Source of the DNA: Glycera tridactyla
Lineage: Eukaryota
DNA length: 64,000 nt
Assembly: GCA_965644265.1 (NCBI GenBank)
Contig: OZ286469.1
Location: 64,790,001-64,854,000 of the forward strand
Reading direction: 5' to 3'
The first letter of the stretch is position 1. The number at the start of each line of letters is the position of its first letter. Positions 19,033 to 19,068 of the stretch are shown one piece after another. Made by a program: the position numbers and the translations under genes. Under the pieces are notes generated by a model. That model ran no database searches. It had not been told where the DNA came from and saw only the letters and a list, made by a program, of their open reading frames with translations.

Positions 19033-19068
19033 ACCGGACTTTGGTTCAAATAAAATTTATTCAACACC
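19033..19068 (-). other. Candidate 36-nt poison or terminal exon (G-V-E-stop; the stop overlaps AATAAA)
   Basis: Reads ctgaatttccttctttttttttcag|GGTGTTGAATAAATTTTATTTGAACCAAAGTCCGGT|gttagtgttctgttttg, 985 nt upstream of the TIA-1 exon. Confidence 0.45.

What the first reader, a model, noticed from the sequence alone, without database searches (positions are those of the whole stretch)
19033..19068. 36-nt exon whose phase-0 stop codon is part of an AATAAA: dual poison-exon or premature-polyadenylation switch about 1 kb before the TIA-1 exon
Seen: very strong acceptor (branch-like ctgaat, 9 U plus cag), then GGT GTT GAA TAA with AATAAA overlapping the stop, then a gttagt donor followed by gttctgttttg. 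Established: TIA-1/TIAR activate weak 5' splice sites followed by U-rich tracts, including stop-containing alternative exons in their own vertebrate pre-mRNAs. Inference: inclusion gives an NMD substrate, while failure to use the donor could give cleavage and polyadenylation. Both would be negative autoregulation.
Basis: partly seen in the sequence, partly recalled or inferred. Interest (0 to 1): 0.7.

Follow-up and report, generated by a model that had tools for sequence, protein, structure and literature searches.

The report
Unproven stop-and-polyadenylation trap in TIA-1 intron
Deep inside a giant intron of an annelid-type TIA-1/TIAR gene lies an unusually strong splice acceptor followed at once by a stop codon and a textbook polyadenylation site, which could cut the message short, but nothing yet shows that the cell uses it or that TIA-1 controls it.

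Summary
The described letters are all present, on the minus strand. The 36-nt segment is 19068..19033, 985 nt upstream of the real TIA-1 exon 18047..17990 (EMKVNWATSPGNQPKQDTS).

The acceptor is the clear outlier of the window: score 15.6, next best 10.6 over 128 kb. In 162 kb of relatives' DNA the only two sites scoring 10 or more are true TIA-1 exon acceptors.

The donor GGT|gttagt scores no better than one GT in four. The "U-rich tract" after it is GU-rich, with 7 U in 19 and a longest run of 4.

The AATAAA that overlaps the stop has a CA 14 nt downstream and the best GU-rich downstream element of 112 hexamers in the window. The signals therefore fit a roughly 27-nt alternative terminal exon better than a 36-nt cassette.

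No RNA run was listed, so use could not be tested. The one relative with 3 kb of the same intron (L027) has no counterpart, and relatives' transcripts join the flanking exons directly. On the plus strand the same letters read AATAAA-N17-A9, like a decayed retroposon tail.

My odds: latent or used terminal micro-exon about 0.4, silent pseudo-exon about 0.4, TIA-1-dependent poison cassette about 0.1. TIA-1 autoregulation is unsupported. Other notes of this scan flagged further candidate poison exons in this gene.

The parts
19089..19095 (-). Branch-point-like TACTGAA. The A at 19090 lies 21 nt upstream of the AG.
   Evidence: Read directly from the sequence. It matches 5 of 7 positions of UACUAAC; that consensus is from general knowledge.
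19069..19088 (-). 17-nt all-pyrimidine tract (TTTCCTTC + T9) followed by CAG: the candidate 3' splice site.
   Evidence: Weight-matrix score 15.6, the only site at 11 or above in 128 kb. In 162 kb of relatives' loci the only two sites at 10 or above are true TIA-1 exon acceptors.
19033..19068 (-). It reads GGT GTT GAA TAA in phase 0.
   Evidence: All known upstream donors (the alternative first exon here and the RRM1 exon in relatives) end in phase 0.
19056..19061 (-). AATAAA hexamer that overlaps the TAA stop at 19059-19057.
   Evidence: It is one of 32 AATAAA on this strand, and the only A[AT]TAAA lying within 80 nt downstream of an acceptor that scores above 7.2.
19042..19043 (-). CA dinucleotide 13-14 nt after the hexamer: the likely cleavage site, which would give a terminal exon of about 27 nt.
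   Evidence: Read from the sequence. That cleavage occurs here is inference.
19013..19035 (-). GU-rich stretch GGTGTTAGTGTTCTGTTTTGATG. It is a candidate downstream element of the poly(A) site and contains the proposed donor GTTAGT (19032-19027).
   Evidence: It ranks first of 112 hexamer contexts in the window, with 18 of 20 G/T. The donor scores 2.6, no better than a quarter of all GT sites.
17990..18047 (-). The real TIA-1/TIAR exon encoding EMKVNWATSPGNQPKQDTS (end of RRM1). It is 58 nt long and starts in phase 0.
   Evidence: It is 90% identical to transcript L001. The same boundaries occur in genomic L027 and L029, and it is joined to KHFHIFVGDL in the transcripts.
61209..61337 (-). Coding part of an alternative first exon (MRMTANGLCLPSEP...), with donor GTG|gttagt. 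It is one of the exons that would feed the candidate acceptor.
   Evidence: Relatives' transcripts P0003 and P0004 join it directly to the EMKVNW exon.
19049..19088 (+). Plus-strand reading of the same letters: AATAAA (19049-19054), 17 nt, then A9 GAAGGAAA. This looks like the 3' end and decayed poly(A) tail of a retroposed element lying antisense to the gene.
   Evidence: Sequence. No target-site duplication, no other copy in the window and no tRNA-like head, so this origin is unproven.

Best explanation
The site is best read as a natural gene-trap: a splice acceptor, an immediate in-frame stop and a poly(A) site, packed into about 55 nt. It sits in the intron of more than 46 kb that precedes the EMKVNW exon of an annelid-type TIA-1/TIAR gene.

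Any upstream donor that pairs with the very strong acceptor at 19069 would add the codons Gly-Val-Glu-stop. These donors are the RRM1 exon, which lies outside the window, and the alternative first exon at 61209. The AAUAAA overlapping the stop, the CA 14 nt later and the GU-rich element after it would then direct cleavage. That gives a terminal exon of about 27 nt and a short mRNA that is immune to nonsense-mediated decay. Its product would be RRM1 without its last strand, or a 46-residue peptide.

The GTTAGT lies inside the GU-rich element. If U1 snRNP binds there, it would be expected to block polyadenylation and, less often, to define the 36-nt cassette.

What is shown: the signals, their rarity and their geometry. 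What is inferred: that the acceptor and the poly(A) site are used at all, how often, and that this lowers TIA-1 output. Control by TIA-1 itself is not supported.
For: - The acceptor scores 15.6, against a next best of 10.6 in 128 kb.
- As a calibration, the only two sites at 10 or above in 162 kb of relatives' genomic DNA are true acceptors of the TIA-1 KHFHIFVGD exon.
- The AATAAA starts 7 nt into the exon and has the best GU-rich downstream 20-mer of 112 hexamers in the window.
- It is the only composite in the window that pairs an acceptor scoring above 7.2 with a downstream element above 14.
- There is no convincing donor within 300 nt, which fits a terminal exon rather than an internal one.
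- The upstream donors are in phase 0, so the stop is in frame.
- Short RRM1-only TIA-1 products that end in this same intron are on record for several other protostomes: P0123, P0125, P0126, P0128, P0129 and the transcript L038.
- U1 bound at a 5' splice-site-like sequence next to a poly(A) site inhibits polyadenylation (PMC3826338).
Against: - No RNA evidence could be obtained, because no run was listed.
- No short product carrying the window's first exon is in the protein collection, and no tail ending GVE occurs among 79 short RRM1 proteins.
- L027, with 3 kb of the orthologous intron, has no similar sequence and no AATAAA. Its best acceptor scores only 8.4.
- A terminal exon of about 27 nt with the hexamer 7 nt from the splice site is unusually small.
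- A trap this strong, 1 kb before a weak real acceptor (score 3.8), would be costly unless it is repressed.
- The pyrimidine tract and the AT-rich palindrome may simply be a decayed antisense retroposon tail.
- My measure of the downstream element was chosen after I had seen the sequence.
Confidence: 0.4

Rival explanations
1. It is a silent pseudo-exon. The letters are a by-product of low-complexity AT-rich intron DNA or of a retroposed element inserted antisense, whose decayed poly(A) tail now reads as a pyrimidine tract. The site is not used, or is used only as noise, and has no regulatory role.
For: - The plus strand reads AATAAA-N17-A9GAAGGAAA, the layout of a retroposon 3' end.
- The local GC content, 0.346, is the lowest of the window.
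- The donor is no better than a random GT.
- There is no counterpart in L027.
- Relatives' transcripts join the flanking exons directly.
Against: - No target-site duplication, no second copy and no SINE head were found.
- Acceptor scores of 10 or more were otherwise rare, and half of the other three such sites seen are real exon acceptors.
- The best acceptor and the best poly(A) context of the window lie within 10 nt of each other.
Confidence: 0.4
2. One reading: a 36-nt cassette exon at 19068-19033 whose weak donor is activated by TIA-1/TIAR bound just downstream. Inclusion puts a premature stop in the mRNA and sends it to nonsense-mediated decay, which would be negative autoregulation.
For: - Vertebrate TIA1 and TIAR do this on their own pre-mRNAs (PMC4385921; PMC4286123).
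- The same unusual GTTAGT donor is used by the real alternative first exon here and in a relative.
- The stop is in frame and lies more than 55 nt before later junctions.
Against: - The donor scores 2.6 with all three exonic positions mismatched.
- Positions +10 to +28 after the donor hold 7 U in 19 with a longest run of 4, not a uridine tract (sequence; PMC2964331).
- An exon of 36 nt is short for exon definition.
- The strong poly(A) site inside the exon competes with splicing.
- The vertebrate poison exon lies in a different intron (exons 6/7, inside RRM2), so the two are not homologous.
- It is not conserved in L027.
Confidence: 0.1
3. The acceptor belongs to a different exon. One option is an untranslated 5' exon of RRM1-less transcripts that start translation at the Met of EMKVNW. 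Another is a longer exon that uses a donor further downstream. In either case the stop would be irrelevant.
For: Several alternative 5' exons feed the EMKVNW exon in relatives: P0003, P0004, P0009, P0079 and L036. Weak donors exist at +171 (score 5.3) and +310 (score 6.4).
Against: No such transcript was seen. The poly(A) signals would still cut the transcript. The alternative donors are weak.
Confidence: 0.05
4. It is a recursive splice site used to remove the giant intron in steps.
For: The intron is longer than 46 kb and the pyrimidine tract is very long, as at known ratchet points (general knowledge).
Against: The AG is followed by GGTGTT, not GT, so no 5' splice site is re-formed after the first step.
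Confidence: 0.02

Closest known systems
Vertebrate TIA1 exon 6a and the TIAL1 stop-containing alternative exons (Le Guiner et al. 2001, PubMed 11514562, as cited in PMC4385921 and PMC4286123)
   Same: It is the same gene family. A short exon flanked by AG...GT inside an RRM-coding region carries an early in-frame stop, and the proposed outcome is negative feedback on TIA protein level.
   Different: The vertebrate exon is 66 nt and lies between exons 6 and 7, inside RRM2. It has EST and protein evidence and responds to TIA overexpression. The candidate here lies in another intron (end of RRM1), is 36 nt, has a donor indistinguishable from chance, has no uridine tract and has no expression evidence. 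The two are not homologous.
Intronic polyadenylation through an alternative terminal exon, and its suppression by U1 snRNP (reviewed in PMC3826338; the SAM68/U1A case in mTor intron 5, PMC6486544)
   Same: An acceptor plus a poly(A) site inside an intron gives a truncated mRNA that escapes nonsense-mediated decay. A 5' splice-site-like sequence beside the poly(A) site could let U1 silence it.
   Different: Known alternative terminal exons are usually over 100 nt. Here the exon would be about 27 nt, with the stop inside the hexamer. No 3'-end data exist for this locus.
Exonisation of antisense retroposon tails, such as antisense Alu poly(U) tracts that act as cryptic acceptors (from general knowledge, not checked in a paper here)
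   Same: An A-rich tail on the opposite strand supplies a long U tract followed by AG. Such sites are usually kept silent.
   Different: No repeat family, target-site duplication or second copy could be shown here.
Engineered gene-trap cassettes (splice acceptor, stop codons, poly(A) signal)
   Same: The same three parts occur in the same order and at minimal spacing.
   Different: This one is natural, untested and much shorter.

Membership tests
NMD-coupled poison cassette exon of an RNA-binding protein | A functional 3' splice site | tested here: met
   At sequence level only: score 15.6, the top of 7371 AG sites, with a branch-like TACTGAA 21 nt upstream.
NMD-coupled poison cassette exon of an RNA-binding protein | A functional 5' splice site that closes the exon | tested here: inconclusive
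   GGT|gttagt scores 2.6, and 1014 of 4062 GT sites score as well. However, GTTAGT is the donor of the real alternative first exon.
NMD-coupled poison cassette exon of an RNA-binding protein | An in-frame premature stop upstream of later exon junctions | tested here: met
   TAA at 19059-19057 is in phase 0. The upstream donors and the downstream exon are in phase 0.
NMD-coupled poison cassette exon of an RNA-binding protein | Inclusion seen in RNA and raised when decay is blocked | not testable with these tools
NMD-coupled poison cassette exon of an RNA-binding protein | Conservation of the exon and its splice sites in relatives | tested here: not met
   L027 covers 3 kb upstream of the orthologous exon and has no similar sequence. 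No relative's transcript carries a cassette at this junction. This is one distant relative only.
TIA-1/TIAR-activated 5' splice site | A uridine tract about 10-28 nt downstream of the donor | tested here: not met
   Positions +10 to +28 read ctgttttgatgcaagacta, with 7 U in 19 and a longest run of 4. The criterion comes from PMC2964331.
Alternative terminal exon / intronic poly(A) site | AAUAAA or AUUAAA hexamer | tested here: met
   AATAAA at 19061-19056.
Alternative terminal exon / intronic poly(A) site | A cleavage site 10-30 nt downstream, followed by a GU- or U-rich element | tested here: met
   CA at 19043-19042. The GU-rich stretch 19035-19013 ranks first of 112 hexamer contexts.
Alternative terminal exon / intronic poly(A) site | Poly(A) ends observed at the site | not testable with these tools
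   No run was listed.
Recursive splice site | AG immediately followed by GT, so that a 5' splice site is re-formed | tested here: not met
   The site reads cag|GGTGTT.
Antisense retroposon tail | Membership of a repeat family and a target-site duplication | tested here: inconclusive
   The plus-strand AATAAA-N17-A9 layout is present. No duplication, second copy or tRNA-like head was found within the window. The rest of the genome was not searchable.

The most novel reading that the evidence does not exclude
This would be a two-output brake on an invertebrate TIA-1 gene. A three-codon terminal micro-exon has its stop inside the AAUAAA, and its 5' splice-site-like GTTAGT sits inside the downstream element of the poly(A) site. 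U1 occupancy, with or without TIA-1, would then decide between a decay-immune truncated mRNA and a decay-targeted poison-exon mRNA. Skipping of the acceptor would be the only productive route. This arrangement would have arisen independently of the vertebrate TIA1 exon 6a.
Probability: 0.08. Interest if true: 0.6.

Novelty: new member of a known kind. Interest (0 to 1): 0.3.

Why it matters
If the site is used, a housekeeping stress-granule and splicing factor of a lophotrochozoan would carry its own built-in terminator, evolved independently of the vertebrate TIA1/TIAR poison exons. It would also be one of the smallest terminal exons described. It would give a compact natural model for the competition between splicing, U1 binding and polyadenylation. 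If the site is silent, it is a clean example of how strong a decoy can sit 1 kb from a weak real acceptor. It would then raise the question of what keeps the decoy off.

Tried and rejected
- **RNA evidence.** I asked look-up of sequencing runs with 3.7 kb of mostly intronic DNA. A shorter, exon-only query would have been wiser, because another note says public runs exist for this genome. Read laying could therefore not be used.
- **Other TIA-1 exons in the window.** Motif scans found none apart from 18047-17990 and the alternative first exon. The four N runs are flanked by low-complexity DNA and were left untouched.
- **Rfam.** No match.
- **Walking along a relative's 2-Mb contigs (ERZ26052378) from its first exon towards its EMKVNW exon.** I abandoned this. 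The gene calls there use TGA as Trp, so most cannot be given by reference, and each step gained under 7 kb.
- **Limulus isoform P0129.** It could not be looked up.
- **Lamellibrachia P0124.** Its KRRCHGD tail is a small exon 277 nt after the RRM1 exon with no poly(A) signal, most likely a gene-model artefact.
- **Retroposon origin.** No duplication, repeat copy or tRNA head was found.
- **Recursive splicing.** Rejected, because the AG is followed by GG.
- **SL trans-splicing.** Considered and set aside, because to my knowledge it is not known in annelids.
- **Search for a short product containing the window's first exon.** It found nothing.
- **Human TIAR chain.** One hit was a human TIAR structure chain. 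It was only listed and not used further.

Full report
**Observation**

The feature lies on the minus strand. Read 5' to 3' it runs as follows:

- TACTGAA at 19095-19089.
- A 17-nt pyrimidine tract at 19088-19072 that ends in T9.
- CAG at 19071-19069.
- The 36 nt GGTGTTGAATAAATTTTATTTGAACCAAAGTCCGGT at 19068-19033.
- GTTAGT at 19032-19027, followed by gttctgttttg.

TAA (19059-19057) is the fourth codon in phase 0 and lies inside AATAAA (19061-19056). The next exon is 18047-17990, 985 nt further on. It encodes EMKVNWATSPGNQPKQDTS, the last strand of RRM1 and the linker of TIA-1/TIAR.

**Gene context**

Motif scans found no other RRM exon in the 64 kb.

An exhaustive profile search with it found three relatives. 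One of them, P0003, is a 376-residue TIA-1 from a transcript contig (L001). In it this exon is joined directly to EMKVNW... and then to RRM2, RRM3 and the Q-rich tail.

Other relatives' transcripts carry the canonical ...AMNKRMCMGR|EMKVNW junction (P0005, P0007, P0010, P0011).

Exon boundaries are identical in two genomic relatives, L027 and L029. All donors that feed this intron end in phase 0, so the candidate's stop would be in frame.

The RRM1 exons are not in the window, so the canonical intron exceeds 46 kb. Other notes place later exons more than 120 kb away and call the animal an annelid. I did not test either point. The protein's nearest named relatives are a mix of molluscs, annelids and arthropods at 60-80% identity.

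**How unusual are the signals?**

I scored all sites with simple weight matrices whose frequencies came from general knowledge and which I used only for ranking.

- The acceptor scores 15.6. The next best of 7371 AG sites on both strands is 10.6, and counts fall about 3.8-fold per 2 units. That gives roughly 0.05 such sites expected per window.
- As a calibration, 162 kb (both strands) of relatives' genomic loci contain only two sites at 10 or above. Both are the true acceptor of the TIA-1 KHFHIFVGD exon (L030, L032).
- The donor is different. GGT|gttagt scores 2.6, and a quarter of all GT dinucleotides on that strand do as well. No donor above 5.3 lies within 300 nt. The same GTTAGT is nevertheless the donor of the real alternative first exon.
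- The real EMKVNW exon has a weak acceptor, 3.8 here and 4.0 in L027.

**The poly(A) reading**

The AATAAA starts 7 nt into the exon. A CA follows 13-14 nt after it (19043-19042). Seven nt further on begins GGTGTTAGTGTTCTGTTTTGATG.

Among the 112 A[AT]TAAA hexamers of the window, this one has the most GU-rich 20-mer in the expected place, with 18 of 20. It is also the only case where a good acceptor, a hexamer and such an element coincide. I chose the downstream measure after seeing the sequence, so its rank should be discounted somewhat.

A strong acceptor, no real donor and a complete poly(A) site fit a terminal exon of about 27 nt better than an internal cassette. The proposed donor lies inside the downstream element. 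A U1 snRNP bound beside a poly(A) site is known to inhibit polyadenylation (PMC3826338).

**The TIA-1 link**

Vertebrate TIA1 and TIAR do induce stop-containing exons in their own pre-mRNAs and lower their own level (PMC4385921). The best-described case is the 66-nt exon 6a between exons 6 and 7 (PMC4286123). That is a different intron, so there is no homology.

TIA proteins cross-link to uridine tracts 10-28 nt downstream of the exon (PMC2964331). Here that interval has 7 U in 19 and no run longer than 4, about the strand's average. The only real uridine tract is the acceptor's U9. TIA binding there would be expected to compete with U2AF and favour skipping, which is the opposite sign. That last point is inference.

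If both the cassette and the poly(A) outcomes are non-productive, the donor is not the regulatory step. Acceptor use is.

**Evidence of use**

None could be obtained.

- A search for short products containing the window's first exon found nothing.
- Among 79 short RRM1-containing proteins, none ends in GVE.
- This species does not appear to be in the protein collection, so these blanks are weak.
- Relatives' transcripts show direct junctions and no cassette.
- Short RRM1-only products that stop in this same intron are on record for a spider, a tick, a termite, Limulus and Priapulus. One transcript contig (L038) continues after the RRM1 exon with CCC CAC TAA, which is not intron-like.
- Most of the others are plain read-through into the intron. 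The Lamellibrachia case looks like a gene-model artefact.

At most, these records suggest that early termination in this long intron is common.

**Conservation**

L027 is a metagenome contig with the orthologous exon (19 of 19 residues, 81% of bases) and 3059 nt of upstream intron. It shows no similarity to the candidate and no AATAAA on that strand. Its best acceptor scores 8.4, which is within chance. Introns are not alignable at this distance. So an old, conserved element is unlikely, but a lineage-specific one is not excluded.

**A rival origin**

On the plus strand the same letters read AATAAA (19049-19054), 17 nt, then A9 GAAGGAAA. This is the layout of a retroposed 3' end with a decayed tail, which in antisense gives exactly such a pyrimidine tract. 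I found no target-site duplication, no second copy and no tRNA-like head. This origin is possible but unproven. It would explain how the site arose, not whether it is used.

**Verdict**

The acceptor and the poly(A) context are jointly more than chance would give.
- The interpretation cannot be settled. Its polyadenylation half is the better supported. Its cassette half is weak. Its TIA-1 autoregulation has no support in the sequence.
- My odds are about 0.4 for a terminal micro-exon that is used or usable, 0.4 for a silent decoy, 0.1 for a TIA-dependent poison cassette, and the rest for other exons or recursion.
- If real, it would be a new member of a known kind.
The N runs were left as they are.

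Noticed in passing
window 61209-61337 (-); L001, L036, P0009, P0079: RRM1-less TIA-1 isoforms look widespread in this clade. Besides the MRMTANGL... first exon, relatives' transcripts join other 5' exons (MQTASALKQ in L036, MAANVILPSEP in P0009, and an Owenia model, P0079) directly to the EMKVNW exon.
   Followed up: partly
window 28301, 37149, 12177, 6774 (-): Four of the seven next-best acceptor-like sites on the gene strand are followed directly by GT (cag|GTTTAA, tag|GTCACC, cag|GTCATT, cag|GTGCAT). None of the top eight on the other strand is. These may be recursive splice sites in the giant introns, although the re-formed donors would be weak.
   Followed up: no
window 19112-19069 (-): A fair donor, CCAAG|gtaaac, lies 44 nt upstream of the candidate acceptor, and together they outline a 44-nt mini-intron. 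Reading through it, ATG at 19157 gives MVDNPYLIWVWFLPK joined in frame to GVE-stop. This is probably chance, but it could be the relic of a gene's last intron and last exon.
   Followed up: no
L003, L004, L005 (ENA ERZ26052378); L002 (TARA): Megabase contigs of a related animal sit in a 'metagenome' assembly. Its gene calls read TGA as Trp, which creates spurious long ORFs (P0001, P0002) that run across the real first exon and its donor.
   Followed up: partly
P0127 (Logan transcript): After ...GNAPKQDTS this relative's product continues RGGVGCLQKRR... and stops, instead of continuing KHFHIF. This is an alternative or poison exon at the next junction, the position of the vertebrate TIA1 exon 5 variation.
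   Followed up: no
L038:1700-1739: A transcript contig of a relative goes from the RRM1 exon end (...TGCTTTGGTAAG) into CCCCACTAAAC, an in-frame stop after two codons that does not start like an intron. The contig ends there.
   Followed up: partly
window 18047 (-) and L027:3059: The real EMKVNW exon keeps a weak acceptor in both species (scores 3.8 and 4.0). The next exon's acceptor is very strong in relatives (11-12 in L030 and L032).
   Followed up: no
window 21544-21696, 25281-25415, 42507-42650, 52312-52518: Four N runs of 135-207 nt, flanked by CA/GT or poly-C low-complexity DNA rather than by splice-site-like sequence. They were left untouched.
   Followed up: no
window 50077 (+): The second-best acceptor-like site of the window (ccttctccccccctcctctcag|C, score 10.6) lies on the opposite strand. 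I did not examine what it belongs to.
   Followed up: no
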